A stretch of 64,000 bases of DNA from Octopus sinensis (taxonomy: Eukaryota): the NCBI RefSeq assembly GCF_006345805.1, contig NC_043005.1, positions 89,776,001 through 89,840,000 of the forward strand, in the 5' to 3' direction. The position numbers and the translations under genes were made by a program. This document shows, piece after piece, positions 3,703-54,960 of this stretch. Each line of letters begins with the position of its first letter. The stretch's first letter is position 1. The notes beneath the pieces were generated by a model. It was not told where the DNA came from. It did not search any database and worked only from the letters and a program-made list of their open reading frames with translations.

Positions 3703-4014
3703 GCACACACATATATATGCAATGTATGAAATAATGGTTGGATCTATTCTATTTGTAATATTTGTATTTAATACATTTGTTACAGTATGTATGTATATGT
3801 GTTATATATATATATATATATTATATATATATATATATATATCATGTGTGTGTGTGTGCATGCACACATAAATATATATATATATATATATATTAACAAT
3901 TAAGGAACGGCCATAATAGGCCATTCACCCACTAGAAATAACAGCCAAAGCTTCTACCGCAAATAAAGATTAATTCCGTAAACAGGAGAAAATTAAAAAA
4001 ACATTTACCCTGTA

Positions 4015-4121
4015 ATTTCTTGTACGGTATACCGTTTCATCCGCTGTTTAATGGTAAACTAACATGATTAAATTAAATCAAGCCAATCTTCCATAAGCCC
4101 TCGGATTCTTCAGCAAGAAAT
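4015..4121 (-). ncRNA. Type I hammerhead ribozyme in the inverted segment of the array
   Basis: Exact reverse complement of 4961-5067. Confidence 0.88.
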
Positions 4122-4960
4122 AGCTCAAGTCGGAACAGATATTTACACGAGGCATACCCAATCTTGCCAAGTCAATATCTGACCTAAAATTTTCAAATCG
4201 TCGCACTCGCGCCAAATTTATCGGCAGCAAATAAATATCAGCCGTCGATTCCATTACGGAATTAACCAAAAAATTCATAATTAATCAATATAGGGTGGCA
4301 AGGAAAATTTTGTAGAATTTTATTGCCACCAGCGGCCCAGTGGGAAAAAATTAAATAGTCATAGACCATTTTTAAGTCCAACATTAACAATTAAGGAACG
4401 GCCATAATAGGCCATTCACCCACTAGAAATAACAGCCAAAGCTTCTACCGCAAATAAAGATTAATTCCGTAAACAGGAGAAAATTAAAAAAACATTTACC
4501 CTGTAATTTCTTGTACGGTATACCGTTTCATCCGCTGTTTAATGGTAAACTAACATGATTAAATTAAATCAAGCCAATCTTCCATAAGCCATTTTTAATT
4601 TTCTCCTGTTTACGGAATTAATCTTTATTTGCGGTAGAAGCTTTGGCTGTTATTTCTAGTGGGTGAATGGCCTATTATGGCCGTTCCTTAATTGTTAATG
4701 TTGAACTTAAAAATGGTCTATGACTATTTAATTTTTTCCCACTGGGCCGCTGGTGGCAATAAAATTCTACAAAATTTTCCTTGCCACCCTATATTGATTA
4801 ATTATGAATTTTTTGGTTAATTCCGTAATGGAATCGACGGCTGATATTTATTTGCTGCCGATAAATTTGGCGCGAGTGCGACGATTTGAAAATTTTAGGT
4901 CAGATATTGACTTGGCAAGATTGGGTATGCCTCGTGTAAATATCTGTTCCGACTTGAGCT

Positions 4961-5067
4961 ATTTCTTGCTGAAGAATCCGAGGGCTTATGGAAGATTGGC
5001 TTGATTTAATTTAATCATGTTAGTTTACCATTAAACAGCGGATGAAACGGTATACCGTACAAGAAAT
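4961..5067 (+). ncRNA. Type I hammerhead ribozyme (first sense copy; repeated in every unit)
   Basis: Stem I ATTTCTTG(4961-68)/CAAGAAAT(5060-67), 8 bp; core CTGAAGA(4969-75); stem II ATCCG/CGGAT closing a 58-nt insert; GAA(5044-46); stem III ACGG-TATA-CCGT; A17=5059 (GUA site). Confidence 0.9.
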
Positions 5068-8000
5068 TACAGGGTAAATGTTTTTTTAATTTTCTCCTGT
5101 TTACGGAATTAATCTTTATTTGCGGTAGAAGCTTTGGCTGTTATTTCTAGTGGGTGAATGGCCTATTATGGCCGTTCCTTAATTGTTAATGTTGAACTTA
5201 AAAATGGTCTATGACTATTTAATTTTTTCCACTGGGCCGCTGGTGGCAATAAATTCTACATTCTACAAATTTTCCTTGCCACCCTATATTGATTAATTAT
5301 GAATTTTTTGGTTAATTCCGTAATGGAATCGACGGCTGATATTTATTTGCTGCCGATAAATTTGGCGCGAGTGCGACGATTTGAAAATTTTAGGTCAGAT
5401 ATTGACTTGGCAAGATTGGGTATGCCTCGTGTAAATATCTGTTCCGACGTGAGCTATTTCTTGCTGAAGAATCCGAGGGCTTATGGAAGATTGGCTTGAT
5501 TTAATTTAATCATGTAGTTTACCATTAAACAGCGGATGAAACGGTATACCGTACAAGAAATTACAGGGTAAATGTTTTTTTAATTTTCTCCTGTTTACGG
5601 AATTAATCTTTATTGCGGTAGAAGCTTTGGCTGTTATTTCTAGTGGGTGAATGGCCTATTATGGCCGTTCCTTAATTGTTAATGTTGAACTTAAAAATGG
5701 TCTATGACTATTTAATTTTTTTCCACTGGGCCGCTGGTGGCAATAAATTCTACAAATTTTCCTTGCCACCCTATATTGATTAATTATGAATTTTTTGGTT
5801 AATTCCGTAATGGAATCGACGGCTGATATTTATTTGCTGCCGATAAATTTGGCGCGAGTGCGACGATTTGAAATTTTAGGTCAGATATTGACTTGGCAAG
5901 ATTGGGTATGCCTCGTGTAAATATCTGTTCCGACTTGAGCTATTTCTTGCTGAAGAATCCGAGGGCTTATGGAAGATTGGCTTGATTTAATTTAATCATG
6001 TTAGTTTACCATTAAACAGCGGATGAAACGGTATACCGTACAAGAAATTACAGGGTAAATGTTTTTTAATTTTCTCCTGTTTACGGAATTAATCTTTATT
6101 TGCGGTAGAAGCTTTGGCTGTTATTTCTAGTGGGTGAATGGCCTATTATGGCCGTTCCTTAATTGTTAATGTTGAACTTAAAAATGGTCTATGACTATTT
6201 AATTTTTTCCCACTGGGCCGCTGGTGGCAATAAAATTCTACAAATTTTCCTTGCCACCCTATATTGATTAATTATGAATTTTTTGGTTAATTCCGTAATG
6301 GAATCGACGGCTGATATTTATTTGCTGCCGATAAATTTGGCGCGAGTGCGACGATTTGAAAATTTTAGGTCAGATATTGACTTGGCAAGATTGGGTATGC
6401 CTCGTGTAAATATCTGTTCCGACTTGAGCTATTTCTTGCTGAAGAATCCGAGGGCTTATGGAAGATTGGCTTGATTTAATTTAATCATGTTAGTTTACCA
6501 TTAAACAGCGGATGAAACGGTATACCGTACAAGAAATTACAGGGTAAATGTTTTTTTAATTTTCTCCTGTTTACGGAATTAATCTTTATTTGCGGTAGAA
6601 GCTTTGGCTGTTATTTCTAGTGGGTGAATGGCCTATTATGGCCGTTCCTTAATTGTTAATGTTGAACTTAAAAATGGTCTATGACTATTTAATTTTTTCC
6701 CACTGGGCCGCTGGTGGCAATAAAATTCTACAAAATTTTCCTTGCCACCCTATATTGATTAATTATGAATTTTTTGGTTAATTCCGTAATGGAATCGACG
6801 GCTGATATTTTTTGCTGCCGATAAATTTGGCGCGAGTGCGACGATTTGAAAATTTTAGGTCAGATATTGACTTGGCAAGATTGGGTATGCCTCGTGTAAT
6901 ATCTGTTCCGACTTGAGCTATTTCTTGCTGAAGAATCCGAGGGCTTATGGAAGATTGGCTTGATTTAATTTAATCATGTTAGTTTACCATTAAACAGCGG
7001 ATGAAACGGTATACCGTACAAGAAATTACAGGGTAAATGTTTTTTTAAATTTTCTCCTGTTTACGGAATTAATCTTTTATTTGCGGTAGAAGCTTTGGCT
7101 GTTATTTCTAGTGGGTGAATGGCCTATTATGGCCGTTCCTTAATTGTTAATGTTGAACTTAAAAATGGTCTATGACTATTTAATTTTTTCCCACTGGGCC
7201 GCTGGTGGCAATAAAATTCTACAAAATTTTCCTTGCCACCCTATATTGATTAATTATGAATTTTTTGGTTAATTCCGTAATGGAATCGACGGCTGATATT
7301 TATTTGCTGCCGATAAATTTGGCGCGAGTGCGACGATTTGAAAATTTTAGGTCAGATATTGACTTGGCAAGATTGGGTATGCCTCGTGTAAATATCTGTT
7401 CCGACTTGAGCTATTTCTTGCTGAAGAATCCGAGGGCTTATGGAAGATTGGCTTGATTTAATTTAATCATGTTAGTTTACCATTAACAGCGGATGAAACG
7501 GTATACCCGTACAAGAAATTACAGGGTAAATGTTTTTTTAATTTTCTCCTGTTTACGGAATTAATCTTTATTTGCGGTAGAAGCTTTGGCTGTTATTTCT
7601 AGTGGGTGAATGGCCTATTATGGCCGTTCCTTAATTGTTAATGTTGAACTTAAAAATGGTCTATGACTATTTAATTTTTTCCCACTGGGCCGCTGGTGGC
7701 AATAAAATTCTACAAAATTTTCCTTGCCACCCTATATTGATTAATTATAATTTTTTTTTGGTTAATTCCGTAATGGAATCGACGGCTGATATTTATTTGC
7801 TGCCGATAAATTTGGCGCGAGTGCGACGATTTGAAAATTTAGGTCAGATATTGACTTGGCAAGATTGGGTATGCCTCGTGTAAATATCTGTTCCGACTTG
7901 AGCTATTTCTTGCTGAAGAATCCGAGGCTTATGGAAGATTGGCTTGATTTAATTTAATCATGTTAGTTTACCATTAAACAGCGGATGAAACGGTATACCG

Positions 8001-9964
8001 TACAAGAAATTACAGGGTAAATGTTTTTTTAATTTTCTCCTGTTTACGGAATTAATCTTTATTTGCGGTAGAAGCTTTGGCTGTTATTTCTAGTGGGTGA
8101 ATGGCCTATTATGGCCGTTCCTTAATTGTTAATGTTGAACTTAAAATGGTCTATGACTATTTAATTTTTTCCCACTGGGCCGCTGGTGGCAATAAAATTC
8201 TACAAAATTTTCCTTGCCACCCTATATTGATTAATTATGAATTTTTTGGTTAATTCCGTAATGGAATCGACGGCTGATATTTATTTGCTGCCGATAAATT
8301 TGGCGCGAGTGCGACGATTTGAAAATTTTAGGTCAGATATTGACTTGGCAAGATTGGGTATGCCTCGTGTAAATATCTGTTCCGACTTGAGCTATTTCTT
8401 GCTGAAGAATCCGAGGGCTTATGGAAGATTGGCTTGATTTAATTTAATCATGTTAGTTTACCATTAAACAGCGGATGAAACGGTATACCGTACAAGAAAT
8501 TACAGGGTAAATGTTTTTTTAATTTTCTCCTGTTTACGGAATTAATCTTTATTTGCGGTAGAAGCTTTGGCTGTTATTCTAGTGGGTGAATGGCCTATTA
8601 TGGCCGTTCCTTAATTGTTAATGTTGAACTTAAAAATGGTCTATGACTATTTAATTTTTTCCCACTGGGCCGCTGGTGGCAATAAAATTCTACAAAATTT
8701 TCCTTGCCACCCTATATGATTAATTATGAATTTTTTGGTTAATTCCGTAATGGAATCGACGGCTGATATTTATTTGCTGCCGATAATTTGGCGCGAGTGC
8801 GACGATTTGAAAATTTTAGGTCAGATATTGACTTGGCAAGATTGGGTATGCCTCGTGTAAATATCTGTTCCGACTTGAGCTATTTCTTGCTGAAGAATCC
8901 GAGGGCTTATGGAAGATTGGCTTGATTTAATTTAATCATGTTAGTTTACCATTAAACAGCGGATGAAACGGTATACCGTACAAGAAATTACAGGGTAAAT
9001 GTTTTTTTAATTTTTCTCCTGTTTACGGAATTAATCTTTATTTGCGGTAGAAGCTTTGGCTGTTATTTCTAGTGGGTGAATGGCCTATTATGGCCGTTCC
9101 TTAATTGTTAATGTTGAACTTAAAAATGGTCTATGACTATTTAATTTTTTCCCACTGGGCCGCTGGTGGCAATAAAATTCTACAAAATTTTCCTTGCCAC
9201 CCTATATTGTTAATTATAATTTTTTTGGTTAATTCCGTAATGGAATCGACGGCTGATATTATTTGCTGCCGATAATTTGGCGCGAGTGCGACGATTTGAA
9301 AATTTTAGGTCAGATATTGACTTGGCAATTGTGGTATGCCTCGTGTAATATCTGTTCCGACTTGAGCTATTTCTTGCTGAAGAATCCGAGGGCTTATGGA
9401 AGATTGGCTTGATTTAATTTAATCATGTTAGTTTACCATTAAACAGCGGATGAAACCGTATACCGTAACAAGAAATTACAGGGTAAATGTTTTTTTAATT
9501 TTCTCCTGTTTACGGAATTCATCTTTATTTGCGGTAGAATGCTTTGGCTGGTTATTTCTAGTGGGTGAATGGCCTATTATGGCCGTTCTTAATTGTTAAT
9601 GTGAACTTAAAATGGTCTATGACTATTTAATTTTTCCCACTGGGCCGCTGGTGGCAAATAAAATTCTACAAATTTTCCTTGCCACCCCTATATTTTATTA
9701 ATTATATATTTATATATATATATACAGATATTATAAAGTCCGAACATGATGGCCGAAATTTTAGGCTGCACTTTGTAAAAGTGGTGATATTTTGAAAGTT
9801 AAATTCCATGTATTTCAATTTTTTTTTCCATTTATTCCAGCAGGAAAAGCTCGTCTTAAATGGCCGAAACCAGTTCTACTTTTTCTTTGCTTTTTGCCAT
9901 ATTTAAAGCTCACTAAGCATTTCCATCTTTTAGTTTTTCCAACACACATACACACACACACACG

Positions 9965-10282: not shown

Positions 10283-11800
10283 TCAAACCCTGAAAATCGC
10301 AATGAAAGGCTCCAAGAACTAAAACAAGCACTACTTAAAAGACAATACCCATTGATGCTTATAGACAACGGAAAAGAACGTGCGAAAGCAATAAACATCG
10401 AAGAACAACGGAAAACGTTCCAGATACACCCAACAATCTACCCTTTATTGGCGTAGTAGAGGACTTCAGCAGCATATCAGCTGACTGAGCAACATTTTTA
10501 GGAACACACTGCTCACCCCAGTAAGAGATGGAGACCTAGAAAAGGTGGTCTAAAGAAAGCCTGCCCTACACCGTTTGGCCAGCTTACAGCGGCTGACAGA
10601 CTTATCACTGGCGGTCGATTCCAACTGAAAAAGGAGCGGGAGGAAGGAATGTTGAACATTCCAGAGAGGGAGATTTTAGAGGTGAATGGGAGGAAGGGGA
10701 GGAAGGAAAGTTGAACATTCCAGAGATGGGGATTTGAGAGGTAAAGGGGAGGATGGGGAGAAAGGAATGTTGAACATTCCAGAGAGGGGTATTTGAGAGG
10801 TGAAGGGGAGGAAGTGGAGGACGGAATGTTGAACATTCCGGAGAGGGGGATTTGAGAGGTGAATGGGAGGAAGGGAAGGAAGGAATGTTGAACATTCCAG
10901 AGAGGGGGATTTGAGAGGTGAATGGGAGGAAGGGAAGGAAGGAATGTTGAACATTCCAGAGATGGGGATTTGAGAGGTGAAGGGGAGGAAGTGGAGGAAG
11001 GAATGTTGAACATTCCAGAGATGGGTATTTGAGAGGTGAAGGGGAGGAAGGGGAGGATGGAATGTTGAACATTCCAGAGAAGGGGATTTGAGAAGTGAAG
11101 GGGAGGAAGTGGAGAAAGAATGTTGAACATTCCAGAGATGGGGATTTGAGAGGTGAAGGGGAGGAAGGGGAGGATGGAATGTTGAACATTCCAGAGAGGA
11201 GGATTTTAGAGGTGAATGTGAGGACGGGGAGGAAGGAAAGTTGAACATTCCAGAGAGGGGTATTTGAGAGGTAAACGGGAGGAAGAGGTGACAAGAATGT
11301 TGAACATTCCAGAGAGGGGGATTTGAGAGGTGAAGGGGAGGAATTTGAGGAAGGAATGTTGAACATTCCAGAGAGGGGGATTTGAGAGGTGAATGGGAGG
11401 AAGGGAAGGAATGAATGTTGAACATTCCAGAGAGGGGGATTTTAGAGGTGAACGGGAGTAATGGGGGGGGGAGGGAATGTTGAACATTCCAGAGAGGGGA
11501 ATTTGTTGGAAAAAGAGTAAAAGAGTAAAAGAGTTACCTCCCTTCGAAAAATTCTTGTCGCCAACAAAAATGGCTGAAACCAAGACCTTGGAAGATTGAT
11601 AAGCGTAGGACGCGAAACCGGTACTCCCAGTTTATTACATAATGTTGTAATACAACTGTTTGTTTTATTATGATCCTAATATTGGCATAAATTTTATTAT
11701 ACAAACCTCCTGTGCGTGTTTACATATTTTACTTTCTAATGTAGTAACATTTACACTCGTTAACAACATCAGACGCCTTTGTATATATCTATATATATGT
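10283..11800 (+). mobile_element. Degenerate Penelope-like fragment (RT thumb remnant, internal minisatellite, pseudo-LTR-like tail)
   Basis: 10283-10414 reads SNPENRNERLQELKQALLKRQYPLMLIDNGKERAKAI, like the PLE thumb region; hammerhead-like motif at 11596-11623. Confidence 0.55.
10640..11500. repeat. ~59-bp purine-rich minisatellite, about 15 copies
   Basis: Recurrent GGAATGTTGAACATTCCAGAGAGGGGGATTTGAGAGGTGAA...; first and last anchors at 10647 and 11475. Confidence 0.9.
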
Positions 11801-13020: not shown

Positions 13021-13729
13021 GGAGGTTAAAAACTGAGATAATAAGTTATTTTTTTATTAAACATAACTACTCCAGGATACCATCTCATCTCTCCTCTCTC
13101 TCTCTCTCTCTTCTCTATGTATGACTTCATTCATTGGACAATAAACTATGTTTGCGAAGACTTGTTGAGGCAAGTGAAATCGAAATCGCTGTCGTGGCCG
13201 ATGAGAGTACCGCCTGATTGGCACCCTACCCATGGAACGTTAAAAGCACCATTCGATCGTGATCGTTGCCAGCGTTACCTTGTTGGCTCCTGTGCCGCTG
13301 GCACGTAAAAAAACGCCATTCGATTTAGAACCTGCGGACTTCCATCTCTTTCCTAAGATGAAAATGCAGGTCAAAGGTCACTGTTTTAACAGCGTTGTTG
13401 AGATGAAGAGTGAATCGCAGAAGGTCCTCAACTAATGGAAAACCTTCCAGGCCGGATTCCAACCGCTTACCGTGATGTAAATCATTACTTAATCTGTCCG
13501 TTGACTCTCAAATCTCTTTCCTGACTTTTTTTTCAACTTTTTTCTATTGTTTTCAAACTGTCTTCACCCTGTTTCTTCTTTCGTTGTTTTCCTGTTGTCT
13601 CTCTCTCTTTTTCCTGCTTCGCCACCACCCACCTTTACCTGTTTGCCACCACTTCTCATCATGCCTGACTTGCACTCGTTCGTCCAACACCTTCAATCCC
13701 TCCTCAGCCGCTACCCCTGGCACCCTGCG

Positions 13730-16700
13730 TTCTCTCTCCCCCCCAATGTTCCGCACCTGCTATAAAACTTTCCCGCTTGCTTTTTAAGAAACCCGGCCAC
13801 TCTAGTCATCTTTCCTTTCTTAGCGGTTGCCTCCGCCATCATGTCCACACCCCCCCGCGGTTTCCTCTTGAAGTTCCACGCTACCCCCTATTCCTCCCCC
13901 TTCATCGAACCCACCCTCGCTCGGACCTCCCGCTCCCTCCTCCGCGCCACCATCCGCTCCACCGCCCCCTCCTTGACTCCCTCGACCATCAACTTCCCCA
14001 GGCCTACCTCCTTCTCTCCGCCCTCTGCCCTCCACTCTTCACCCAACCTATCCTCCGCTTCATTCTTAATCTCAACCACCAACTCTACAACCACCTCACA
14101 CACAAAAAAAACAAAAAAACTCCACCTCCTCCTCAACCCCTCACCTCCTTCCCCATCCTCCCCACTGTCCCCCCCCCTCCTTCGCACCTACCCCACCCTT
14201 CACGGACCCCCCCACCGTGACCTTCCTACGCCTAACCCATCTTCACCCAACCACCCCTACCCTCCCCTTCACACCCCTGCACCCCCTCCGCCTGCCCCTA
14301 GTCCTCCCACCACCCGCTTCCTCGCGCTGTTGTCACTATACCCCCCACCTCCCCCTCTCCGCGCTGAGCGCTCCCTCCTCAGTAAAGGTCTCCGCTTCAC
14401 GCCACTCACGCGCCACTGTGATGAGTTCGAGACTCGGGCGGACGTCAACCTGTTCCTGCGCCGCCTCAAACTTCGCGCATACTACCACGCGTCCCCGCAG
14501 CGTCAAAACAATCAGGATTGCCTTTTGGAGCTGGGGCGTCCGTCCATCCATCTGGACGCCGCCCCCAGGCCTTTTCAGTAGCCTAGATTCGTTTGTACAT
14601 GACTGCAACGCTTTGGTCCACCGTTTCAACTTTGAACCAAGACCCCGCCGAGCCAACCTCACTCGGGCCGCCGAATCCATTGCCCTTCGCCACCTCCGCC
14701 GTCGTGATGACATTGTCATCAAACCGGCGGACAAAGGCGGGCAGGGTAGTGTGGCGCGCGGACCTATACAGGGAGGAAGCGCTCAACCAGCTTCAAAATC
14801 CACTCTTCTATCGCCTCCTCCCCTCCGATCCCACCTCCTCCTACCAACAACGAGTGTCCTCCACCATCCACGACCTCATCTCCTCCTCCGCTCTCCCCCT
14901 CACCGCCACCAACCTCATCGTCCGCACACCCGCACCTCCACCATCTACTTCCTCCCAAGATCCATAAACCCTCTAATCCTGGCGTCCCATAGTCTCTGCT
15001 GTAATTGCCCCACTGAACTCATCTCCCTATACCTCGACCGCATCCTGTCCCCCTTAGTCGCAGCCCTCCCATCCACATACACGACACCAACCACGCCCTC
15101 CGTCTCTTCAATTCCTTTTCCTTCCTTCCAGCCCCTCAAACCTCCTCTTCACTTAGATGTAAAAATCCCTGTACACAGTGATTCCCCACAATGACGGTCT
15201 CCTAGCCCTCCAACACTTCCTCGACCGTCGTCCCGACCCCACCCCCAGCACCCCCACCCTTCTCCGTTTGGCCGAGCTCGTCCTCACCCTCAATTGCTTC
15301 ACGTTCGCCGGGGAAACGTACCAACAGGTGTCCGGGGTCGCGATGGGAACTAGGAGGGCCCCAATTTCGCCAATCTCTTTCTGGGCTACATTGAGGCCCA
15401 AGTGTCTCCCAGTTCTCTGGGCCGACCCCCGAACTATACGGTCGCTATAACGACGACTGCGTAGGTGCCACCTCCCTTTCCCGTGAACTTCTCTGCCAAT
15501 CATCTCTTTCCTTCCAACTTTCACCCCTCCCTTCAATTCACCTCCACCATCTCCAACACCTCTGTCAACTTCCTTGACATCTCTCTCCGCATCGATCACC
15601 CCTCCAGATCTCTCACCACCACCGCCTTTTTTAAACCTACGGATTCCCACCTCTATCTCAACTTCTCTTCCTCCCACCCCTTCCACACCAAACGAGCCAT
15701 CCCCTACTCCCAGTTCCTCCGCCTCCGACGTTTGTGCAGCCGCGACCAGGATTTCGAGACCCAATCTCAATACCTGGCCCGCATGTCAGACTCCGAGGTT
15801 ACCCCACCCCATACTCCTCTCTGATGCCCTCACCCGCGCCCGTCGCATCGACCGCACTACCGCCCTGTCTCCTTCCCCCGCCCACCCCCAACCGCACCCC
15901 CTTCCCCCTCCTTTTCCACCCCTCTACCCTACCCCTCGTCGCAAGATACTACGTGCCTTCCGTCGCCTCCAGCTTGATCCCACCACCCGCCCCATTTTCC
16001 CTAACCTACCCTGTCCTCTTTCAAACGAGCCCGCAATCTGCGTGACCTCCTGGTCCACAGAACCCCTCTCCTTCCCCCTCAGCCCCACACGGATCATTCC
16101 TTGCTCTAGATCCCGCTGCAACACTTGCCCCTTCATCACCAACACCACCGCTGTCACCGGCTCCAACCTGCACACTGTACGCATTAGGCACTCTTTTACG
16201 TGCACCTCGTCTGGCCTTATTTACTGCATTAAATGCAAACTATGCGGGATGCTGTATGTAGGACAGACGGGACGCCGGTTGTCCGACCGTTTCACTGAGC
16301 ACTTAAGGGACGTTCGCCTACACTCTCTTTCTCCCGTCGCACGCCACTTCCGCTCGGCCGGCCATTCCCTAGATGACATCTCAGTGTTTGGTCTCGCCCC
16401 CCACCAAGGTCGCCCACTTTCCAGGCTCCACTTGGAGCAACGCTACATCTTCACCCTACAAAACTACCACCCCACACGGACTTAACCACAGCCCCCTCCT
16501 CTTGAGATCTGTTTTTTTTTTTTTTTTTTTTTTGGCACACCACCCACACAACCCACCCACCTGCCTCCCACACGCACACCACCCACCACTCCCACACACA
16601 CCCCACACCTACCTCCCACACGCCTGTTCACACACACACATACGTAGACCATACGTACATACATTCACACCTTTTCACCACACACAGACAATACTAGCAC

Positions 16701-19700
16701 ACACTAACATACAAACCAACATGCACATACACACACACATACATACATACGCACACACACACACTACTACACTACTGTTACACACACATACTAGACACAT
16801 ACTACATACACATTACATTTAATCACCACACACTTACAGACATACTAGCACACACAACATACAAACACATACATACACACACACATAATTACGCACACAC
16901 ATACATACTTACACACACACACACAACAGACATACATCACACATACACACACACATACATACGCACATACATACACACACACTCACCCACACACACACCG
17001 CACGTACATACTTCACACACACACATGCAAACATACATGTAGGCACATACATACATACATGCCCCACACATGCACACCCTTACACTGAATGCACACACAC
17101 ATACACCTTTTTGCATCCAGGCAGCCCCCCCTCTTTTCTGCTTTCCGGTTTTGGCTGATGGATCCTCGGTTCCCGCGTAGCGGGGGCGTTCGAGGGCCTT
17201 TGCGCTCGCGCGCCTTGGCGCGCGCTGGGGGCTTGGTCGGCCCCTTGGGCTTGCGTTGTACTGCTTGCGTTTGTGTGCGTGAGCGCGCTTTGTGCGTGTG
17301 GGCTTGCTTCGGATGTGCGCGTACGTATGTATGCATACATACCCACACACTCGCATGCATCCCTACCCACATTAATACACGCACACCTACTCACACACAC
17401 ACATACACACACATACCTGCACACACACACACACTACCTACACATACACTACATACCTACTTCAGACATACACACACAGACATACACCCATACACTCACC
17501 TCACACGCATACACACACACACATACACACGCACACGTACACATACACCACACACACACACCTACATACATACATTACACTTGTATACACACACACTTAC
17601 ATTCATACACACACACACCTACACAGCCATACCTCACTCAGACACACACATCTACTACACACACACACAAACACACACGGACACACACCCATACATACAT
17701 ACATCTACACACCACACGCCTACACACATACATACACACATACATAAACACACACACATACACATATACACACATACGCACACACACATTACTTATACAC
17801 ATGCAGCACCACACACACATACATACATACACCCATATACATACATACACACATACCCACATACTCCTATACGCACATACATACACAAAGACATACACCT
17901 TACACACACTACACAAACATACACACACACATACTTACACACACACTCACCTGCACGCGCACACACATGCATGACAAACACCCATACATCACACTCACAT
18001 ACGCACACACCAACATAAACACGCACACGCACACACACACCTACACTCCCACACAATACACACGCATAACACACACGCACATACACACGTACACACACAC
18101 ACCACACATACACATGCATACACACACACACACAAAATGCACGGACAACCTAGAATACACACACATACACCTATAACACACGCCCACACACCTACATACA
18201 CACACATATACACACGCCCACACACCTACATACACACAAATACATACACACACATACACGGACACACACCCACACATACTTACATACATACACCTATACA
18301 CACACGCCTACAACACCTACATACACACACATGCATACACACACACACACATGTACGCACATACACACACATATACGCACATACTATATACCACACAACA
18401 TGCACACACACCACACATACGCACATGCATGCATGCATGCACACGCGCACACCTACACGCATACACACACACACACGCACGTACACATACATACATACAC
18501 ACACGCATACATACACCCATACACATACATGCATCCGACACACACATACATACACACTCACACATACATACACACACACACACTCACTCACAACTGTATG
18601 TACGCGCACACACATGCACATACACACACTTCCCCACCCCACACGTACATACATACACACTCACACACATACACACACACACACACACACACGGACATAC
18701 ATATCTATGCACACACATACATACACACATACTCACATACATTCATCGGACACACTGCCACCCAGACATACACACAGACACACTCACACATCCACACACA
18801 TACATACTTACGGCGATACTCGCAGGCACGCGCACACACGCACTTGCGCCGGCTCGCGCTGCATACGCGCCGCATACACCTCGCCCTTGGACCTGACGAG
18901 ACCTCCCGCCCGTTCCTGGGACCGTCCGTGTCGTGGGTTTTCCCACGCCCTGTCTCCGCGGGACCACTCTCCATCTTCCCCTCAGCTGGAGTCCTTTTTC
19001 CTAACCCCCCCTTTTTTCGTTACACAACACGCGCACACATATACACACCTTGCTATATATATATACATCACTCTTACACACATTCAATCTACTCGCCATT
19101 AATACCACCACGACACTGACACACACACACACTACTACTCAACACACGCTGGCACGCTACATACCGCCCCCAACCCTTCCCTCCCTCCCTTCCTCCTTCC
19201 CTTCTTTTTCTTACTACTGACCTCCCTTCCTCCTTCCTTCTTTTTCTTACTATGACCTCGTCTGCTAGCTGACACTTAGTCTCGCCCTACCCCACACGCC
19301 TACACAAGACGCCACACTAACACACACATAAATTTTTTGTTTTTTCATCTCGCCTCACACACACACATACACACACGCACACGCACACACTCACACAATA
19401 CACAAAATCTGTTGGGTTACCAACCTTGTCTCCACTTTTTGCCTTTAAAAAACCACTTTGCTCTTGTTATCGTCAACATCCGCCTTTCACCATGTGCAAC
19501 TCGTAAACACCAGTCGTCTTTTTTCTCTTTCACTGTTGCCCGCTCTGGGATCTTTCTTTCCTCTCTCTTCCTTCTTTATGTTTCCGACGAAGAGCTCCGC
19601 TCGAAACGTCATACTCCCTGCTTCCATCTCCTGAGCGCCTATTAATAATAATACTGTAATTGTTCCGGTTTGTTGTTGTTTTTTTGTTTCCCTTTTGGAT

Positions 19701-26963: not shown

Positions 26964-30234
<3,271 letters not shown>

Positions 30235-37468: not shown

Positions 37469-40400
37469 TGTTACACATTCATGTCTATGTGTTTACATAT
37501 GCCAAACTACATCCCCACTCTTGGCACAATTTTGTTAGTGAACAGTACAACTGTGTGTAAAGTATATATTGTATTAGTACGCTGAATGTCGAGTCCGTGT
37601 AACATGAGAAGTAAATAAACCCGTAACAATAACAATGGTTTTCATTTGGTTGTCTATCCCATTAGAACCCAAACTACACATAACATGGTGGCAGCGGTAA
37701 ATAATTAATCGGGAACTGTGCCTTTACAACGATACAGAAACACAACGAACGAGGAATTAACAAACATAACATCGCTTCGCCTTAGTACAACAAACACGAC
37801 GATCCAAGATGGTGACCCCCGTCGCCGTACAGATGAATCTACGTCCGATTATGAACTGGGATTCTAGTGATGTAGAAGCATTTAAAAAATTTAAACAAAA
37901 AACTCAACTAGCTTTCAAAAGTTTCCTGAAAGGCACAACTGACGATGAGAAGGTAAGCTATTTCCTTTTATGGTCAGGTAATAAAGGAATAGACCTATTC
38001 AATAGCTGGGATATGTCAGAATCGGACTGCAATAACCCAGACACACTTCTTGAGAAATTTGAAAGGCACCTAGAGCCCAGGTCGAACCATAGAATTCACA
38101 GATACGAATTCCAGGGCCTGAAACAAGATCCACAAGAAACAATTGACAATTTCCTGTCAAGACTGAAAAATGTTGCAGAGAAATGCAAATTCAAAGACAG
38201 GGAGGAGAGAATTGTAGACCAATTAATATGGGTGTGTGCCCACAAAGAAGTACAAAAATCACTAATGGGTAAGGACGCTCTCCAGTTGGTAGAGGCAGTA
38301 GACACTGCAAGAGCATTCGAAGCCACTACCAAACAAATGGCCTCACTTAGCTTACAAACAAGCTCACTAGATAGCAGTGTAGATATTGTATCTAGGCACA
38401 GGACACATACCCACAAACAAAGAACATGCCAGTACTGTGGTACAGAGCATGAATTTAATAACCGAAAAAAATGTCCTGCATTCGGTACACACTGCAAAGC
38501 ATATGGAAAACTTAACCACTGGGAAAAAATGTGTAGGTTAACAAAATCCCAGAAATACAAGCCCCAATTTTCAAAGAGGAGCAGAAATAGAAGAGATATA
38601 CATGCACAACAACAGGAACAAAACACCTCAGAGGAGGAATTCTTGGCAGTCGGCATAATAAATGTGCATGAGATGGGAAAGGACGACCGGAAGAAAGAAG
38701 ATGAGGCATACACGACAATAAAAATACAGAAGAAGTCTGGCAGGAAACGAACAAACATAGACTTAAGGCTAAAGATTGACACTGGGGCCCAGAGTGATAT
38801 CTTGCCTGTCAGCTTATACAAGAAGATGTTCCCAGAAAATATGACAGAAGAGGATAGGGTCAGGAAAGGAATCCCCACACCAAGTGATGTAATCCTCACT
38901 GCGTATGGAGGAACCAGGATTCCACAACTGGGTAAAACAACTATCACAGGGACACACAAAGGAAAAATAATTAAGTGTTCTTTTTATGTCACAAGAACAG
39001 AAGGGCCAGCAATTCTTGGACTCAATACCTGCAAAAAGCTAAACATTGTATCAATCAATGCTGAAGTGAAAGCAGCTCCAAGCAGGATTGACAGTGATAT
39101 GCCTATCAAAGACCGACCACCAATCACAAACAAACAGGAGATGGAAGGACTAAGCATAAAGGTCCACCACATTGTAAATGTGACAACCACAAAGCTAGCG
39201 GAAATCAAAGAGGAGACCAGCAAAGATGAAGAACTTCAGCTCCTTACTCAGATGGTGATTCAAGGGTGGCCAGAAAAGAGACATCAGGTGCAACCCCTGA
39301 TTCGTGAATATTGGGCCATCCATGATAATATATCAGTGGAGAATGGAATCCTGATGGCTGGATCCCGAATAATTATACCCAAGTCAATGCAAGAAGAGAT
39401 TCTTGACAAGATCCACCAAGGGCATCTCGGAATGGAGAAATGCAAGCTCCGAGCCAAGTCAGCAGTATATTGAGTAGGCATGTACAAAGACATAGAAAAG
39501 ATAGTTTCTACATGCCACATCTGTCAAAAGTACAGAAACTCACAACAAAAGGAGGAAATGATATCTAGTGACATCCCAAGAAGGCCATGGCAAACTATTG
39601 GAGTAGATCTGTTCACAGAGGGCCAAGAATGGTATTTGATAATGGCCTGCTACTACTCCAAATTTCCATTTGTGAGAAAAGTGAAAGACCTGACAGCCGA
39701 AACAATCACTACAGTGGCTCGAGGACTTCTAGCAGAGCAAGGAATACCAGAGCAGATCATATGTGACAATGGAACCCAGTTCACATCACAAGAATTCAAA
39801 AAGCTAGCCGATGAGTATGGGTTCAATATTACAACTTCATCTCCACACTACCCCAAAGGCCATGGGTTTATAGAAAGACAGGTGCAGACAGTGAAGAGAA
39901 CACTAGTCAAATGCCGAGAGACTAAGGAAGATCCACACCTGGCACTTCTGTCCCTACGAGCGACACCACTGAGAGCTGATATGAAATCCTCAGCAGAATT
40001 GCTGAATGGCATGAAGTACAAAACTACCCTGCCAACTAATATCCAACCTCCTATTGACCAGGAAGAGACAAGGGCAAAGCTTGCAGCCACTCAAGAACAA
40101 TCACAGAGGTATTACAACAAACATGCACAATGTTTACCTGAGATACTTGGAGGACAACATGTGCATACTCAAGATCCCATAACTAAAACATGGATCCCAG
40201 CTCAGGTTGTCAGTAGAGCTGAAACTCCAAGATCATATATAATGGAAACGGAATCTGGTAGGCAGCTGAGACGCAACAGGGCCCACATCCGCCCAACACC
40301 AGAGCTGTCGAGGACAACGTGTACAACACCTGCTGCATTAGTGACAACACCCACAGAATCATCACCCCAACGTGCACCAACCACCTATCAGCAGCCCAAC

Positions 40401-48683: not shown

Positions 48684-48766
48684 TTTTCCTGATGAGAAAG
48701 CGGCATAATGTACTCCTTATTCCCTCACAATTAGGAATATGCAGCCTTCGAAACATATGTCGAAAA
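48684..48766 (+). ncRNA. Type I hammerhead ribozyme, sense to SLC22 paralog B intron 1
   Basis: Stem I TTTTC/GAAAA; core CTGATGA; stem II GAAAGC/GCCTTC extended by GCATA/TATGC; GAA; stem III ACATATGT; C17=48761 (GUC). Confidence 0.8.
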
Positions 48767-52056: not shown

Positions 52057-54960
52057 TGTCGTCCCCCTGCTTCATTTTCAAACATTTAATTTTGGAGACA
52101 AATTTTTGATGCAGTGTAGCTCCATTGCTTTTCTTGAATTTTGATCATTTCTTGATCATTTGTAAAAGGGAAAGATTTGGAACTTTCCTTCACCGCATAT
52201 TTCTAGATGTTTGCTCAGTGGAATCTTGCGCAATTCATCTTGTCGGATGTGTTGTCTGTGGATTCTTGCACGTTTGCAGAGGGAATTCTTTGTTTCGACA
52301 ATGTAATTTTCCTTGTAGTTGGGGCAAGTAATGCAGTATATGAAATTCTGCGTCTTGAAGTTCATATCTGCATTTACTTTGAACTATAATTCGCCCTTGA
52401 ATTTCATGTGAGAACCACTTTCTAAGTATTTGAAGTTGTTGTTGTTGTTGTTGCCTGTTCCACTACTGCTATCTTCACATTCTCTTACGGAGAATTCTGA
52501 TTCATTCTCTAATGTTAATTTTGCTCTTGTAGTGTTTTCTGAGACTTTTTGGTTGGCATATACTGTGTTCTAAGTGGTTTTTATCAATCAGAGTTTTCGT
52601 TTTGGGGCTTTGTAGAGGTAAAGGTAGGGTTTGATTTTATGGTGTGAAAGATGTCGACTAACCCAGCATTGGTTAATAGAAACGTGTGTTCATTAATGTT
52701 TTTCCTTTGGTGTTCTTAGTTGTAAGATGCTCAGCTTCATCGCATTTTTAATACCCTCGCTTATTAATTCTAAGGGGTATTTCTCTTTTGTTACGAAGTG
52801 CTTGAACTCGTTGAGTCGGATTTTACGTATTTTGGGGCCAATCACTATAGTACAGATCCGTCTTACCATGCTGTATGGGATGTTCCTTTAGATGTGTGAG
52901 GGATGGAAACAGTAGAAATTCCAATATTGGTGTGGGTCCGTTTTTTTTTATTATTGTAAAATATGTCTGTTATGACTGTGGAGTTGTGTATTTTTATGTG
53001 AATATCCAGGAATGGTAATTCACTGCAACTGGATTCTGTCACGAATTTGATGGATTGATGAGGTGAGTTGAGTATATTATTAAATATTTGTAGGTTCTCA
53101 TTTGATTTGTCCCAAAAGATGAAGCAGTCTTCCAAGAAGCGTTTCCATTTTTTAATGACGTATTTCTTGCAATCCTGATTAAAAGCTCTTTGTACCTCCT
53201 CATAAAACTTTTCTTCCAAGTGTCCCATGACTGGGTTAGCATAAGAGAGTGCAAACTGCGTCCCCATAGCCGTGGCCTTTTATCTGTCGATATGTTTTAT
53301 TATCGAATCTAAAGGTGTTTCTTCTAATACCAGTTGTTGTGTTGGTGCTTGAGGACCAGCACACTATTGATCTGTTTCAGGTCAGTAGGTCTTAATATTT
53401 TTATGTATTGGTTCCTCTGCTCATTTATGGCTCTATGTATTTCGGGGCTTTCGTGGATTTTGGGTAATCTGTAGAAATTGTTCTCTTTGATTACAGAGTT
53501 GCATGAATAATCCTTCTCCTTCTATGTGAAGGAATCTTGTTGTTGTTGTTGGTGGAGGTTCCTTCTCCCGCCATGCCTGGCTCATAAAGGCTGGTTTCAT
53601 TGGCGTATAGGTTCCCCACCTGGACGGGACACCGGTCTGTCGCAGGTGAGCTGCAAGATGCATTAGGGAAGAGTGAGAGAAAGTTGTAGTGAAAGATTCA
53701 GCAGAAAATCGCCATTGCCTTCTGCCGTAATCGCACGAAGCTTAGGTGTTTCACTCATAAACACACACATCGGCCGGCCTGAAATTCGAACCCATGATCC
53801 CTCGACCACGGATCCACTGCTCTAACCACTCGGCCATGTGCCTCCACTGAAGGAATCTTGGCATTCATTAATTAAAGTTTTGATTTATTCATTATTGCGT
53901 TTTCCGGGTGTCTTGGTTCTTCCTTGTAAGAGGTTTAGTCTGTTAGAATCTCCAATATTCTGTCTTTACAGTAGTCTTTGTCCATGATTACTCTCACCCA
54001 TTCTTACGACGACTGAGTTGTCATTCTTCAGTGTTAGTAAGGCTTCCTCTTCTTCTTCACGAATGTTTTGTTTGCATTTACGGGTACTTTGGGGAAATTT
54101 CGAAATTGCGTCTGTATATGCATCAAAATGTTTGTCATTCCCCTTGTATGAGGTTAAGTGGGATTTATTTCTGACTATTGATTCATCAAATATATCCTTA
54201 TTGCTGAAGAATTCTATAAGTCGCAGGTAGCGGTTAAAATGCTCAATATTAGCTTTTAGTTCAGTGACATTAGGGGTAGGTGTCAGGGTAAATTTGAAAC
54301 CTTTCAATAGGCGGTTCATCTCATCCTTGTTGAGGTTTCTATTTGACAAACTTATGATCTTCGGGTCTACATGTTCTGTGTGCTAATTAAAATTTTATGT
54401 TGCGTAGAGTTTGGCGCGTGATTGTGGTATTTTCTCCATAAAAAGTGAATTGTATTACTGTTTCCATTATTTTGTTGTTTCGGGTTTCTGGTTCCCTCGG
54501 AGGTGAGGGGATGGTTCATGTTCTTTGTATGTATTTCGTTGTCCATAGGTTCTGTCTTCTTCCCATCTTTTATTCATTGGGTCATTTAAGGAATTTGGAA
54601 CTATTGGTCGTAAATCGCAAGTTTCTTGTGTTTCCATAGTGATTATTTATATTACGCTCTTTGTGTTGTCCATATTTTTCTTGTCCTTCTTTCTATGTAG
54701 TCATCCATCTAAGGTACGTGGTATTATGGGTCGGTGGTTGTCTGTATGTTATGTGTCTGTCCTGTCTTTTTCCCCATGTATTCAACCATCTAGGGTGTTT
54801 GATATTACGCGATGAGGGTTGTCTTCTATATTCCATGTGTTTCTTTATTGCAGAGTTATACTTTGGTATTGCAAAATGTGAGTTTCCAGTCTGCACTTGG
54901 GGTGGATTGGGGGGTCATCTCCACACATGCTCTTGGATGTCTTGAGGTTCGATACCTTAG
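52057..54960 (-). mobile_element. Second Penelope-like element (degenerate RT + GIY-YIG)
   Basis: MGTQFALSYAN...WKRFLEDCFIFW; IYCITCPNYKENYIVETKNSLCKR; LLKGFKFTLTP. Confidence 0.85.
53540..53847 (-). mobile_element. tRNA-derived SINE with (ACA)n tail inserted in the PLE
   Basis: 13-bp TSD TGAAGGAATCTTG (53527-39, 53848-60); A box TGGCCGAGTGG, B box GGTTCGAAT. Confidence 0.88.

What the first reader, a model, noticed from the sequence alone, without database searches (positions are those of the whole stretch)
3892..9703. Array of ~490-bp units, each carrying a type I hammerhead ribozyme: candidate cephalopod retrozyme / circRNA system
Seen: complete units contain ATTTCTTG-CTGAAGA-ATCCG-(58 nt)-CGGAT-GAA-ACGGTATACCGT-A-CAAGAAAT. 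This gives an 8-bp stem I, a canonical CUGANGA/GAAA core, a 5-bp stem II, a 4-bp stem III with tetraloop and a GUA site. There are 10 sense copies (the 6th has an extra C and the 10th a substitution in stem III) and one inverted copy. Known: tandem monomers with one type I hammerhead each define metazoan non-LTR retrozymes and PLE pseudo-LTRs; their multimeric transcripts self-cleave to monomers that can circularise. Inference: transcription would give ~490-nt monomers or circles, and the near-identical head-to-tail copies fit rolling reverse transcription of a circular template by a PLE RT in trans. The monomer is longer than the roughly 170-400 nt I recall for such elements, and the loop II insert is unusually large. 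The 12-nt palindromic stem III could also allow double-hammerhead pairing between adjacent units.
Basis: partly seen in the sequence, partly recalled or inferred. Interest (0 to 1): 0.95.

Follow-up and report, generated by a model that had tools for sequence, protein, structure and literature searches.

The report
Tandem hammerhead-ribozyme retrozyme array
A 5.8-kb block of near-identical 491-bp repeats, each carrying a complete but unusually shaped self-cutting hammerhead RNA motif, is a new example of the known animal "retrozyme" mobile elements, and its layout shows it was pasted in by Penelope-type reverse transcription.

Summary
Window 3892-9705 holds 10.4 head-to-tail copies of a 491-bp, 36% GC unit plus 1.4 inverted copies. 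There are 10 sense hammerhead motifs, one complete inverted motif and one truncated one.

The motif has every invariant core base and three helices, and it is the MFE fold in isolation. It never arose in 200 shuffled windows. Rfam Hammerhead_1 aligns end to end but scores only 21.4 bits (gathering 34), because of a ~57-nt insertion in loop II. Standard annotation misses it.

What I add is the insertion architecture: a (TA)n target, an inverted 5'-truncated arm, and outer ends at two different internal AT-rich unit positions. These are the hallmarks of Penelope-like target-primed reverse transcription on a circular or multimeric RNA template.

- "Cephalopod" is unsupported; the organism is unresolved.
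- A 491-nt unit is within published ranges.
- Most copy differences, including the extra C in hammerhead 6, look like long-read indel errors.
- The two PLE copies in the window are decayed and unrelated to the unit.
- A10.1-U11.1 and competing folds leave cleavage efficiency uncertain.

No relatives were found, so there is no covariation evidence. Verdict: new member of a known kind, moderate interest.

The parts
3803..3891 (.). Left flanking (TA)n microsatellite, taken as the target site
   Evidence: TRF row 3803-3893 and sequence. It blends into the unit's terminal ...TTAAT.
3892..4590 (-). Inverted, 5'-truncated arm of 1.42 units. Unit position 415 lies at the inner junction and unit position 131 at the outer end.
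   Evidence: Junction mapping. One difference from the consensus in 699 nt.
4015..4121 (-). Complete hammerhead motif of the inverted arm
4506..4590 (-). 5'-truncated hammerhead at the inversion junction. It lacks the helix I 5' strand, CUGAAGA and part of helix II, so it cannot cleave in cis.
4591..4592 (.). Inversion junction. It joins unit ~415 (-) to unit ~24 (+) and is not a symmetric palindrome.
   Evidence: Junction sequence CTTCCATAAGCC|A|TTTTTAATTTTC
4592..9705 (+). Sense arm: 10.4 head-to-tail units of 487-494 bp (consensus 491 bp, 36% GC), running from unit ~24 to unit 237
   Evidence: TRF, consensus and copy table, junction map
4961..5067 (+). Hammerhead 1 (reference copy). Helix I 4961-4968/5060-5067; CUGAAGA 4969-4975; helix II 4976-4980/5039-5043 with a 58-nt extension hairpin; GAA 5044-5046; helix III 5047-5058; A17 at 5059; predicted cleavage 5059|5060.
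   Evidence: MFE fold is the three-way junction, -32.8 kcal/mol, z = -3.75. Rfam RF00163 aligns to model positions 1-45/45, 21.4 bits, E = 0.0032.
5456..5561 (+). Hammerhead 2 (1-nt deletion in the loop II extension); cleavage 5553|5554
5942..6048 (+). Hammerhead 3, intact; cleavage 6040|6041
6431..6537 (+). Hammerhead 4, intact; cleavage 6529|6530
6920..7026 (+). Hammerhead 5, intact; cleavage 7018|7019
7413..7519 (+). Hammerhead 6: extra C in the helix III 3' arm (CC>CCC) and a 1-nt loop II deletion. Both are homopolymer-type changes and possibly sequence errors.
7905..8010 (+). Hammerhead 7 (GGG>GG in the loop II extension); cleavage 8002|8003
8394..8500 (+). Hammerhead 8, intact; cleavage 8492|8493
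8882..8988 (+). Hammerhead 9, intact; cleavage 8980|8981
9369..9476 (+). Hammerhead 10: G>C mismatch in helix III and an extra A at the cleavage site. It lies in the error- or decay-rich right end.
9706..9726 (.). Right flanking (TA)n-rich tract. The array's outer end ...TTAATTAT merges into it.
14400..16485 (+). Context only: decayed Penelope-like element. RT motifs are spread over three frames, followed by a CX4CxxC linker and a GIY-YIG endonuclease. It is very C-rich and has no sequence similarity to the unit.
52159..54382 (-). Context only: second decayed Penelope-like element, AT-rich, with RT and GIY-YIG pieces over three frames. It has no sequence similarity to the unit.

Best explanation
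The locus is one insertion of a non-autonomous, non-coding retroelement of the metazoan non-LTR retrozyme class. Each 491-nt unit carries one type I hammerhead ribozyme.

Proposed mechanism:
1. Transcription of the + strand gives a multimeric RNA. This is inferred.
2. [quoted passage not shown] The motif is shown; the activity is inferred.
3. A host tRNA-type ligase circularises the monomers into a highly structured circle in which helix I is mostly unformed, which protects the circle from re-cleavage. The fold is predicted; the ligation step comes from the literature.
4. A Penelope-like element's RT and GIY-YIG endonuclease, supplied in trans, nicks a (TA)n microsatellite. AT-rich stretches of the circular or multimeric RNA anneal to the nicked ends. 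Reverse transcription runs round the template many times to give the 10.4-copy sense arm. A second priming event on the other strand gives the inverted 5'-truncated arm. The architecture is shown; the enzyme and the template topology are inferred.
For: Ribozyme:
- All invariant positions are present (C3 U4 G5 A6 G8 A9, G12 A13 A14, A15.1-U16.1, A17), with helices of 8, 5 (plus extension) and 4 bp.
- The MFE of the isolated domain is the hammerhead junction, z = -3.75.
- Rfam Hammerhead_1 is the top hit and the only ribozyme hit, and it covers the full model.
- No equivalent motif appeared in 200 shuffles.

Retrozyme class features (criteria):
- One hammerhead per unit and a 10-copy tandem.
- GC 36%.
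- No homologue for the only ORF, and no tRNA or other Rfam family in the unit.
- Strand-specific structure: the circular + strand folds at -141 kcal/mol, z = -5.8, while the - strand reaches -103, which equals the shuffle mean.

PLE-type integration:
- (TA)n lies on both sides.
- There is an inverted 5'-truncated arm at the upstream end.
- The inner junction is asymmetric (unit 415 against unit 24), so it is not a fold-back.
- The two outer ends sit at different internal unit positions (131 and 237), both at TTAAT/TTAT.
- Craig et al. name tandem/inverted structures and microsatellite bias as the PLE-specific TPRT features.

Other:
- Outer ends that are not at the cleavage site argue against a cleaved linear monomer primed at its 3' end.
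- Youth: about 0.14% substitutions, and unit CpG o/e of 1.16 against 0.65 for the window.
- PLEs of two families exist in this genome.
- Dimer option: -78.6 kcal/mol against 2 x -32.8.
Against: - No relatives were found in any collection available. There is therefore no covariation or conservation evidence, and no evidence of transcription or circles.
- The hammerhead is atypical. It has A10.1-U11.1 where G-C is 'highly conserved' and no recognisable loop 1/loop 2 tertiary motifs, which was a criterion used to call bona fide HHRs. It scores below Rfam gathering.
- In the circle and in nascent transcripts, predicted helix I occupancy is 0-6%. An upstream GGGUAUGCC segment competes for helix III and the cleavage site, with a ddG of 2.5-3.2 kcal/mol.
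- Both PLE copies in the window are dead and share no sequence with the unit, so the partner element is unidentified.
- (TA)n flanks prevent a target-site duplication from being demonstrated.
- Copy number rests on an assembly with an indel-rich error profile.
Confidence: 0.75

Rival explanations
1. It is an ordinary satellite or minisatellite that grew at the DNA level, by unequal crossing-over, replication slippage, or rolling-circle amplification and reintegration of extrachromosomal DNA at a fragile (TA)n site. On this view the hammerhead is an inherited passenger or relic, not part of the amplification mechanism at this locus.
For: Tandem arrays can expand by recombination. The 2026 preprint itself invokes local amplification of retrozyme repeats. 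(TA)n tracts are recombinogenic, which is general knowledge. The right-hand copies look more divergent than the left, as is seen at the edges of homogenised satellites.
Against: The inverted arm is not a symmetric fold-back, because the junction joins unit 415 to unit 24. Both arms are 5'-truncated inward and end outward in AT microhomology with the flanks, which is what target-primed reverse transcription predicts. Differences are mostly indel noise rather than substitutional divergence. It is a small isolated array in unique, TE-rich DNA, not a satellite block.
Confidence: 0.12
2. The unit is the pseudo-LTR (terminal region) of an autonomous Penelope-like element. The array would then be a run of solo pLTRs or a heavily 5'-truncated tandem PLE insertion, not a separate non-autonomous family.
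For: PLE pLTRs carry type I hammerheads, and PLE insertions form partial tandems with inverted 5'-truncated copies. Xenopus retrozymes are sister to PLE pLTRs.
Against: No PLE ORF adjoins the array, which is bounded directly by (TA)n. The unit shows no similarity to either PLE relic in the window. Ten full units with precise unit-to-unit joins fit a ~491-nt template better than a 3-4 kb one. PLE hammerheads are usually minimal, with little or no helix III, whereas this one has a stable 4-bp helix III.
Confidence: 0.08
3. The hammerhead-like motif is a chance or decayed resemblance and does not cleave. The repeat would then be a non-catalytic tandem repeat.
For: It scores below Rfam gathering. 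It has A10.1-U11.1, no canonical tertiary-contact loops and a 58-nt insertion in loop II. The catalytic fold is a minor predicted conformer in context. There is no comparative support.
Against: All 13 constrained core positions and three helices are in the right order. No motif of this strength appeared in 200 shuffles. The full-length Rfam alignment has E = 0.0032. The context, one motif per unit of an AT-rich tandem repeat with a PLE-type insertion, is exactly where such ribozymes are known to reside. Mussel retrozyme HHRs also lack the canonical tertiary nucleotides yet cleave. Natural compensatory changes at 10.1-11.1 are documented.
Confidence: 0.1
4. The copy number or the inverted arm is an assembly artefact, for example expansion or mis-joining of one or two real copies.
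For: Differences between copies are dominated by homopolymer indels typical of noisy long reads. Craig et al. note that PLE tandem/inverted structures cause assembly problems.
Against: Copies carry distinct private differences and the array is only 5.8 kb, which single long reads can span; this is an inference. The junction and both flanks are clean, and the region around the junction matches the consensus almost perfectly.
Confidence: 0.07

Closest known systems
Metazoan non-LTR retrozymes (Cervera & de la Pena 2020, PMC7229834), e.g. Acropora 220-245 bp, Mytilus 350-390 bp, axolotl 330/350 bp
   Same: One type I hammerhead per unit of a short, AT-rich, non-coding tandem repeat. No LTR, PBS or PPT. 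The circular RNA is predicted to be highly structured. A PLE RT is the proposed driver of tandem cDNA synthesis from circles.
   Different: The unit is longer than the species studied there, though inside the ranges reported since. Helix II carries a 58-nt extension hairpin instead of 4 bp plus a loop. Helix I is a plain 8-bp stem without an internal loop. 10.1-11.1 is A-U. Helix III is a stable 4-bp stem inside a 12-nt palindrome. The catalytic fold is predicted to be masked in the circle, a pattern the paper describes for plant retrozymes and some mussel circles but not for most metazoan ones. Expression and circles are untested here.
pDo500 satellite of Dolichopoda cave crickets (PMC2837043)
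   Same: A repeat of about 500 bp with one hammerhead per unit. Both single- and double-hammerhead cleavage modes have been proposed. Compensatory variation at 10.1-11.1 is tolerated.
   Different: pDo500 is a major satellite (about 5% of a genome) with a compact 49-nt hammerhead. Here there is a single small array with a 107-nt hammerhead, and there is no sequence relationship.
[quoted passage not shown] 2021, PMC8557442)
   Same: Type I topology and a palindromic helix III that allows dimers. The insertion architecture matches: tandem plus an inverted 5'-truncated copy, with a microsatellite (TA)n target.
   Different: PLE hammerheads are mostly minimal, with little or no helix III, and keep G10.1-C11.1. 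The unit here encodes no RT or EN and shows no similarity to the PLE relics in the window.
Rfam RF00163 Hammerhead_1
   Same: The full-length alignment places all core positions and all three helices.
   Different: 21.4 bits against a gathering score of 34. About 57 nt are inserted in loop II and 6 in loop III. It is not detected in window-scale or 6-kb searches.

Membership tests
Hammerhead ribozyme, type I | Conserved core: C3 U4 G5 A6 N7 G8 A9, G12 A13 A14, A15.1-U16.1 pair, H17 (not G) at the cleavage site | tested here: met
   CUGAAGA, GAA, A-U closing pair of helix III and A17 (GUA site) are present in 10 of 10 sense copies and the inverted copy. Copy 10 has an extra A at position 17.
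Hammerhead ribozyme, type I | Three helices around the core, with helix I open and helices II and III closed | tested here: met
   Helix I 8 bp (open), helix II 5 bp plus an extension hairpin, helix III 4 bp plus a UAUA loop. This is the MFE of the 121-nt domain, z = -3.75.
Hammerhead ribozyme, type I | Score at or above the Rfam RF00163 gathering threshold (34 bits) | tested here: not met
   No hit at gathering or in the 6-kb E-value search. It scores 21.4 bits, E = 0.0032, with the full model aligned, when 131 nt are searched alone. The shortfall coincides with the ~57-nt loop II insertion.
Hammerhead ribozyme, type I | G10.1-C11.1 pair at the base of helix II (highly conserved in canonical HHRs, PMC4209133) | tested here: not met
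   A10.1-U11.1 in all copies. Natural compensatory changes at this pair are reported in pDo500, so this counts as a deviation, not an exclusion.
Hammerhead ribozyme, type I | Loop 1/loop 2 tertiary contacts between helices I and II (used in PMC7229834 to call bona fide HHRs) | tested here: inconclusive
   There is no internal loop in the 8-bp helix I. Helix II has an internal loop after 5 bp that could substitute for loop 2. Mussel retrozyme HHRs also lack the canonical nucleotides yet cleave.
Hammerhead ribozyme, type I | Covariation or conservation of the helices among relatives | not testable with these tools
   No relatives were found in viral, metagenome or prokaryote collections, or through ORF-based searches. 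No eukaryotic genome DNA collection was available.
Hammerhead ribozyme, type I | Site-specific Mg2+-dependent self-cleavage | not testable with these tools
   This needs in vitro transcription. Predicted occupancy of the catalytic fold is high in isolation but low in long contexts.
Metazoan non-LTR retrozyme | [quoted passage not shown] | tested here: met
   491-bp units, 10.4 sense copies, one HHR per unit. The size is within the 51-972 bp reported.
Metazoan non-LTR retrozyme | Low GC (<50%), non-coding, no LTR, PBS or PPT | tested here: met
   GC is 36%. The only consensus ORF (66 aa) has no homologue among 5.8 billion proteins. Units join directly head to tail with no LTR structure. PBS and PPT were not searched for formally.
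Metazoan non-LTR retrozyme | Stable, highly self-paired predicted circRNA structure | tested here: met
   The circular + strand folds at -141 kcal/mol with 59% of bases paired, z = -5.8. The complement is no better than the shuffles.
Metazoan non-LTR retrozyme | Co-occurrence with Penelope-like elements in the same genome | tested here: met
   Two decayed PLE copies of different families lie in the same 64-kb window. An active PLE was not shown.
Metazoan non-LTR retrozyme | Expression as monomeric linear and circular RNAs | not testable with these tools
   No transcriptome data were accessible. ORF-handle searches of public assemblies found nothing.
Metazoan non-LTR retrozyme | Dispersed multicopy family with target-site duplications longer than 4 bp | tested here: inconclusive
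   There is one locus in the window and no other copy. The (TA)n flanks could hide a target-site duplication.
Autonomous Penelope-like element (pLTR array) | RT plus GIY-YIG ORF between or adjacent to the repeats | tested here: not met
   The array is bounded directly by (TA)n. The nearest PLE ORF remnants lie more than 4.5 kb away, are decayed, and share no sequence with the unit.

The most novel reading that the evidence does not exclude
This insertion may preserve a record of how retrozymes integrate. Its two cDNA arms start at two different internal positions of the unit (131 and 237), neither at the ribozyme cleavage site, and both at AT microhomology with a (TA)n target. That would mean the template had no 3' end, that is a covalently closed circle copied by rolling-circle, twin-primed reverse transcription by a PLE enzyme. 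The 58-nt helix II extension would then define a hammerhead sub-class that Rfam-based annotation misses, possibly serving as the RT-recruiting or fold-switching module.
Probability: 0.3. Interest if true: 0.6.

Novelty: new member of a known kind. Interest (0 to 1): 0.38.

Why it matters
Retrozymes are a ribozyme-based route to abundant circular RNAs in animals, and how they are mobilised is still inferred, not demonstrated. This locus adds three things.

1. It is a family whose hammerhead escapes standard Rfam annotation because of a long helix II insertion. Surveys that rely on gathering thresholds or tight descriptors therefore probably undercount such elements.
2. It is a very young insertion whose architecture ties a retrozyme to PLE-type target-primed reverse transcription. 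The features are a (TA)n target, an inverted 5'-truncated arm, and variable internal start points. They argue for a circular or multimeric template rather than a cleaved linear monomer.
3. It is a compact, testable substrate for single- versus double-hammerhead cleavage, because helix III is both a stable hairpin and a perfect 12-nt palindrome.

It does not change the known picture, and it is not evidence about cephalopods.

Tried and rejected
- **Rfam at window and 6-kb scale** found no hammerhead. Only a 131-nt search recovered RF00163. The microsatellite 'miRNA' hits at 3813-3893 are low-complexity artefacts.
- **Searches for relatives:**
  - A viral contig scan with a 27-mer gave 0 hits.
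  - The metagenome scan gave 4 hits, all chance matches in soil contigs with no helix I and no further homology.
  - The prokaryote genome scan gave 7 chance hits.
  - The 66-aa ORF in the unit, used as a handle, has no exact record and no homologue.
- **Organism identification failed.**
  - Three window ORFs are not on record.
  - The best LINE RT hits are ~55% identical, with named hits from Penaeus, Oculina and insects.
  - A 70%-identical hit lies on GCA_024449705.1, and a PLE endonuclease relative on GCA_949826985.1. I could not resolve the taxon of either.
- **Two other hammerhead-like motifs** from my scanner (48684-48766 +, 31985-31899 -) were rejected as chance. Shuffles give 0.4 hits per window and 9% give two or more, and neither motif folds as a hammerhead.
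- **The neighbouring PLE as the autonomous partner** was rejected. It is decayed, its composition is different, and it has no similarity to the unit.
- **tRNA or SINE-like origin:** no tRNA was found. By eye the unit contains only weak partial Pol III A/B box resemblances, and I did not pursue them.
- **Literature:** nothing in the held library describes a cephalopod or shrimp retrozyme.

Full report

Yes. Tandem Repeats Finder reports one array at 4592-9705 with period 490, 10.4 copies and 98% matches. Reading the sequence and anchoring on the motif gives ten + strand copies of ATTTCTTG-CTGAAGA-ATCCG-(58 nt)-CGGAT-GAA-ACGGTATACCGT-A-CAAGAAAT, starting at 4961, 5456, 5942, 6431, 6920, 7413, 7905, 8394, 8882 and 9369. 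There is one complete copy on the - strand (4121-4015) and one 5'-truncated copy at an inversion junction (4590-4506, -).

Copy 6 has an extra C in helix III, and copy 10 has a G>C change in helix III. Copy 10 also has an extra A at the cleavage site, and three copies have 1-nt changes in the loop II extension.

The patterns never occur in dinucleotide shuffles. A hammerhead descriptor of this strength never matched in 200 shuffled windows.

**2. Quality of the copies**

A consensus built from the cleavage-site-anchored monomers is 491 nt with 36% GC. Against it, the whole locus shows 46 indel positions but only 8 substitutions. The leftmost 1,167 nt (3892-5059) differ at a single position, and differences rise to 5 per 100 nt at the right end. 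More than half of the differences are 1-nt homopolymer length changes.

Real decay is dominated by substitutions, so I read most of this as long-read consensus error. On that reading the true copies are about 99.8% identical or better, and the 'extra C' of hammerhead 6 (CC>CCC) may not be real. The exact copy number also depends on the assembly. The unit's CpG observed/expected ratio is 1.16, against 0.65 for the window, which also fits a young insertion.

**3. Is it a hammerhead?**

Every invariant core position is present, along with an A15.1-U16.1 pair, a GUA cleavage triplet and three helices in type I topology. The 121-nt domain folds into exactly this junction as its MFE (-32.8 kcal/mol, z = -3.75). 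The 58-nt 'loop' forms a long imperfect hairpin that extends helix II.

Rfam finds nothing at gathering threshold on the window, and nothing at E<=10 on 6 kb. When 131 nt are searched alone, RF00163 Hammerhead_1 is the top hit and the only ribozyme hit. It aligns to model positions 1-45 of 45 at 21.4 bits (gathering 34), E = 0.0032, with ~57 nt inserted in loop II. The motif is therefore complete but atypical, and routine annotation misses it.

Three deviations matter:
- 10.1-11.1 is A-U, where G-C is called highly conserved. Natural compensatory variation at this pair is known, though.
- Helix I is a plain 8-bp stem without the internal loop that usually contacts loop 2. The mussel retrozyme ribozymes also lack the canonical contact nucleotides and still cleave.
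- In longer contexts the catalytic fold is predicted to be a minor conformer. In the circle it lies 3.2 kcal/mol above the MFE, with helix I 2% occupied. In nascent transcripts helix I occupancy is 0-6%, because an upstream GGGUAUGCC segment pairs with helix III and the cleavage site (ddG 2.5 kcal/mol). These differences are within the error of the energy model. Masking of this kind is described for viroids, plant retrozymes and some mussel circles. I treat it as a caveat, and possibly a way of protecting circles, not as a refutation.

**4. The dimer idea**

ACGGUAUACCGU is a perfect 12-nt palindrome. Two domains co-fold at -78.6 kcal/mol, against -65.6 for two separate monomers, through a 12-bp intermolecular helix III. 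In a folded tandem transcript the palindromes of adjacent units pair with each other. A palindromic helix III is a recognised feature of metazoan and PLE hammerheads, which often act as dimers. Unlike those, this ribozyme also has a 4-bp hairpin form of helix III, so both modes are open.

**5. The rest of the unit**

As a circle the + strand folds at -141 kcal/mol with 59% of bases paired, z = -5.8 against dinucleotide shuffles. The complementary strand reaches only -103, no better than the shuffles. The structure is therefore specific to the ribozyme-bearing strand.

The unit contains a 66-aa ORF that has no exact record and no homologue among 5.8 billion proteins. It has no tRNA and no other Rfam family.

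**6. Architecture of the insertion**

In unit coordinates, with position 1 being the C after the cleavage site, the locus runs as follows:

| Segment | Window | Unit positions |
|---|---|---|
| Left flank | up to 3891 | (TA)n |
| Inverted arm (-) | 3892 to 4590 | outer end at unit 131, inner end at unit 415 |
| Junction | 4591/4592 | joins unit 415 (-) to unit ~24 (+) |
| Sense arm (+) | 4592 to 9705 | unit ~24, through 10.4 copies, to unit 237 |
| Right flank | from 9706 | (TA)n |

Both arms are therefore 5'-truncated at the inner junction and have their 3'-proximal ends facing outward. The junction is not a symmetric palindrome, which argues against a DNA fold-back. The two outer ends lie at different internal positions, both at TTAAT/TTAT sequences that merge with the (TA)n flanks.

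Craig et al. describe PLE insertions in these terms: partial tandems, often with an inverted 5'-truncated copy immediately at the 5' end. They also report (TA)n as a preferred target and multicopy head-to-tail insertions of non-autonomous derivatives. They name tandem/inverted structures plus microsatellite bias as the PLE-specific features of target-primed reverse transcription.

My inference is that the array is one retrotransposition event made by a PLE-type RT/EN with priming on both nicked strands. Neither arm starts at the cleavage site. The template was therefore not a cleaved linear monomer primed at its 3' end, and a circle or an uncleaved multimer fits better. This matches the published model of tandem cDNA synthesis from a target-primed circRNA, but I cannot tell a circle from a multimer using sequence alone.

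**7. PLEs nearby**

Two PLE copies lie in the window.
- **Relic 1, ~14.4-16.5 kb (+):** it keeps the DKG, RT, thumb, CX4CxxC linker and GIY-YIG motifs, but they are spread over three frames. The region is 56-61% GC with an extreme C excess. Its endonuclease region has six database relatives (E from 1e-17 to 1e-31), four of which give the same weak GIY-YIG Pfam match at the equivalent region.
- **Relic 2, ~54.4-52.15 kb (-):** it is AT-rich and equally broken.

Neither shares sequence with the unit. They show that PLEs have lived in this genome, which meets the co-occurrence criterion. They are not the active partner.

**8. Relatives and organism**

No relative of the unit was found in viral contigs. 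Metagenome contigs gave four chance matches, and prokaryote genomes gave seven. I had no eukaryotic DNA collection to search, so covariation could not be tested.

The source organism is unresolved. No window ORF is on record. An intact LINE RT has best hits of ~55% identity, with named hits from Penaeus, a coral and insects, and none from cephalopods. One 70%-identical fragment sits in an assembly whose taxon I could not determine. 'Cephalopod' is therefore an unsupported label. From my own background knowledge, the very high microsatellite load would fit several invertebrate groups, penaeid shrimps among them.

**9. Comparison with what is known**

The element meets the testable criteria of a metazoan non-LTR retrozyme:
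- one type I hammerhead per unit;
- a short AT-rich tandem repeat;
- no coding capacity;
- no LTR structure;
- a structured circle;
- PLE co-occurrence.

Its unit size is not exceptional. Consensi of 51-972 bp are reported, HHR-flanked repeats are stated to be expressed as circRNAs of 150 to >1000 nt, and there is a ~500-bp hammerhead satellite in cave crickets.

What distinguishes it is the ribozyme's shape: the long helix II extension, the plain helix I, the A-U pair at 10.1-11.1 and the stable palindromic helix III. The other distinguishing feature is the clarity of its insertion scars. No paper in the held library describes such an element in cephalopods or shrimps. [quoted passage not shown]

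**10. Verdict**

This is a new member of a known kind. Confidence that it is a retrozyme-type element inserted by reverse transcription is about 0.75. Confidence that the ribozyme is efficient as a monomer is lower. Interest is moderate (0.38). Its value lies in three points: it is an annotation blind spot, it is a clean PLE-type insertion signature for a retrozyme, and it is a convenient test case for single versus double hammerhead cleavage.

Noticed in passing
window 13500-19500 (+ strand): The first PLE relic and the (CA)n-rich tract after it are extraordinarily C-rich on one strand. GC is 0.53-0.61 with a GC skew of -0.36 to -0.64 (about 45-50% C and 11% G). The resulting translation is rich in Pro, Ser, Thr and His but still shows PLE motifs. 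This looks like strand-asymmetric hypermutation or a compositionally odd family.
   Followed up: partly
window 52159-54382 (- strand): A second decayed Penelope-like element, AT-rich, with N-terminal, RT and GIY-YIG pieces spread over three frames and an interruption around 53.5-53.8 kb.
   Followed up: partly
window 5060-9705 versus 3892-5059: There is a gradient of differences from the consensus along the array. The left 1.17 kb has one difference, and the right end reaches 5 per 100 nt, almost all of them indels. This could reflect uneven polishing of a long-read assembly, or real edge decay.
   Followed up: partly
window 27449-29401 (- strand): An intact 650-aa non-LTR reverse transcriptase ORF (RVT_1 plus zf-RVT). 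Its best database relatives are only ~55% identical, so this is a young element of a family poorly represented in public protein sets. A 73.7% nucleotide match over 2.2 kb was found to a contig of GCA_024449705.1.
   Followed up: partly
window 37809-40481 (+ strand): Two long intact ORFs of an LTR-retrotransposon-like element. One is gag/protease-like and ends in an integrase zinc-binding domain; the other has an rve integrase core. Together they suggest another recently active element.
   Followed up: no
window 10638-11505: A 59-bp tandem repeat of 14.7 copies at 88% identity, purine-rich on the + strand. It generates long spurious ORFs on the - strand.
   Followed up: no
window 48684-48766 (+) and 31985-31899 (-): Two weak hammerhead-like motif matches (CUGAUGA...GAAAC, short palindromic helix III, large loop II span). 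Their number is compatible with chance and neither folds as a hammerhead.
   Followed up: yes
window 4804-5004 (+) and equivalents in other units: A 66-aa ATG ORF is present in the consensus unit and runs into the 5' half of the hammerhead. It is intact in 6 of the 10 sense units (it is also intact in the inverted copy). It has no homologue or record anywhere and is most likely fortuitous.
   Followed up: yes
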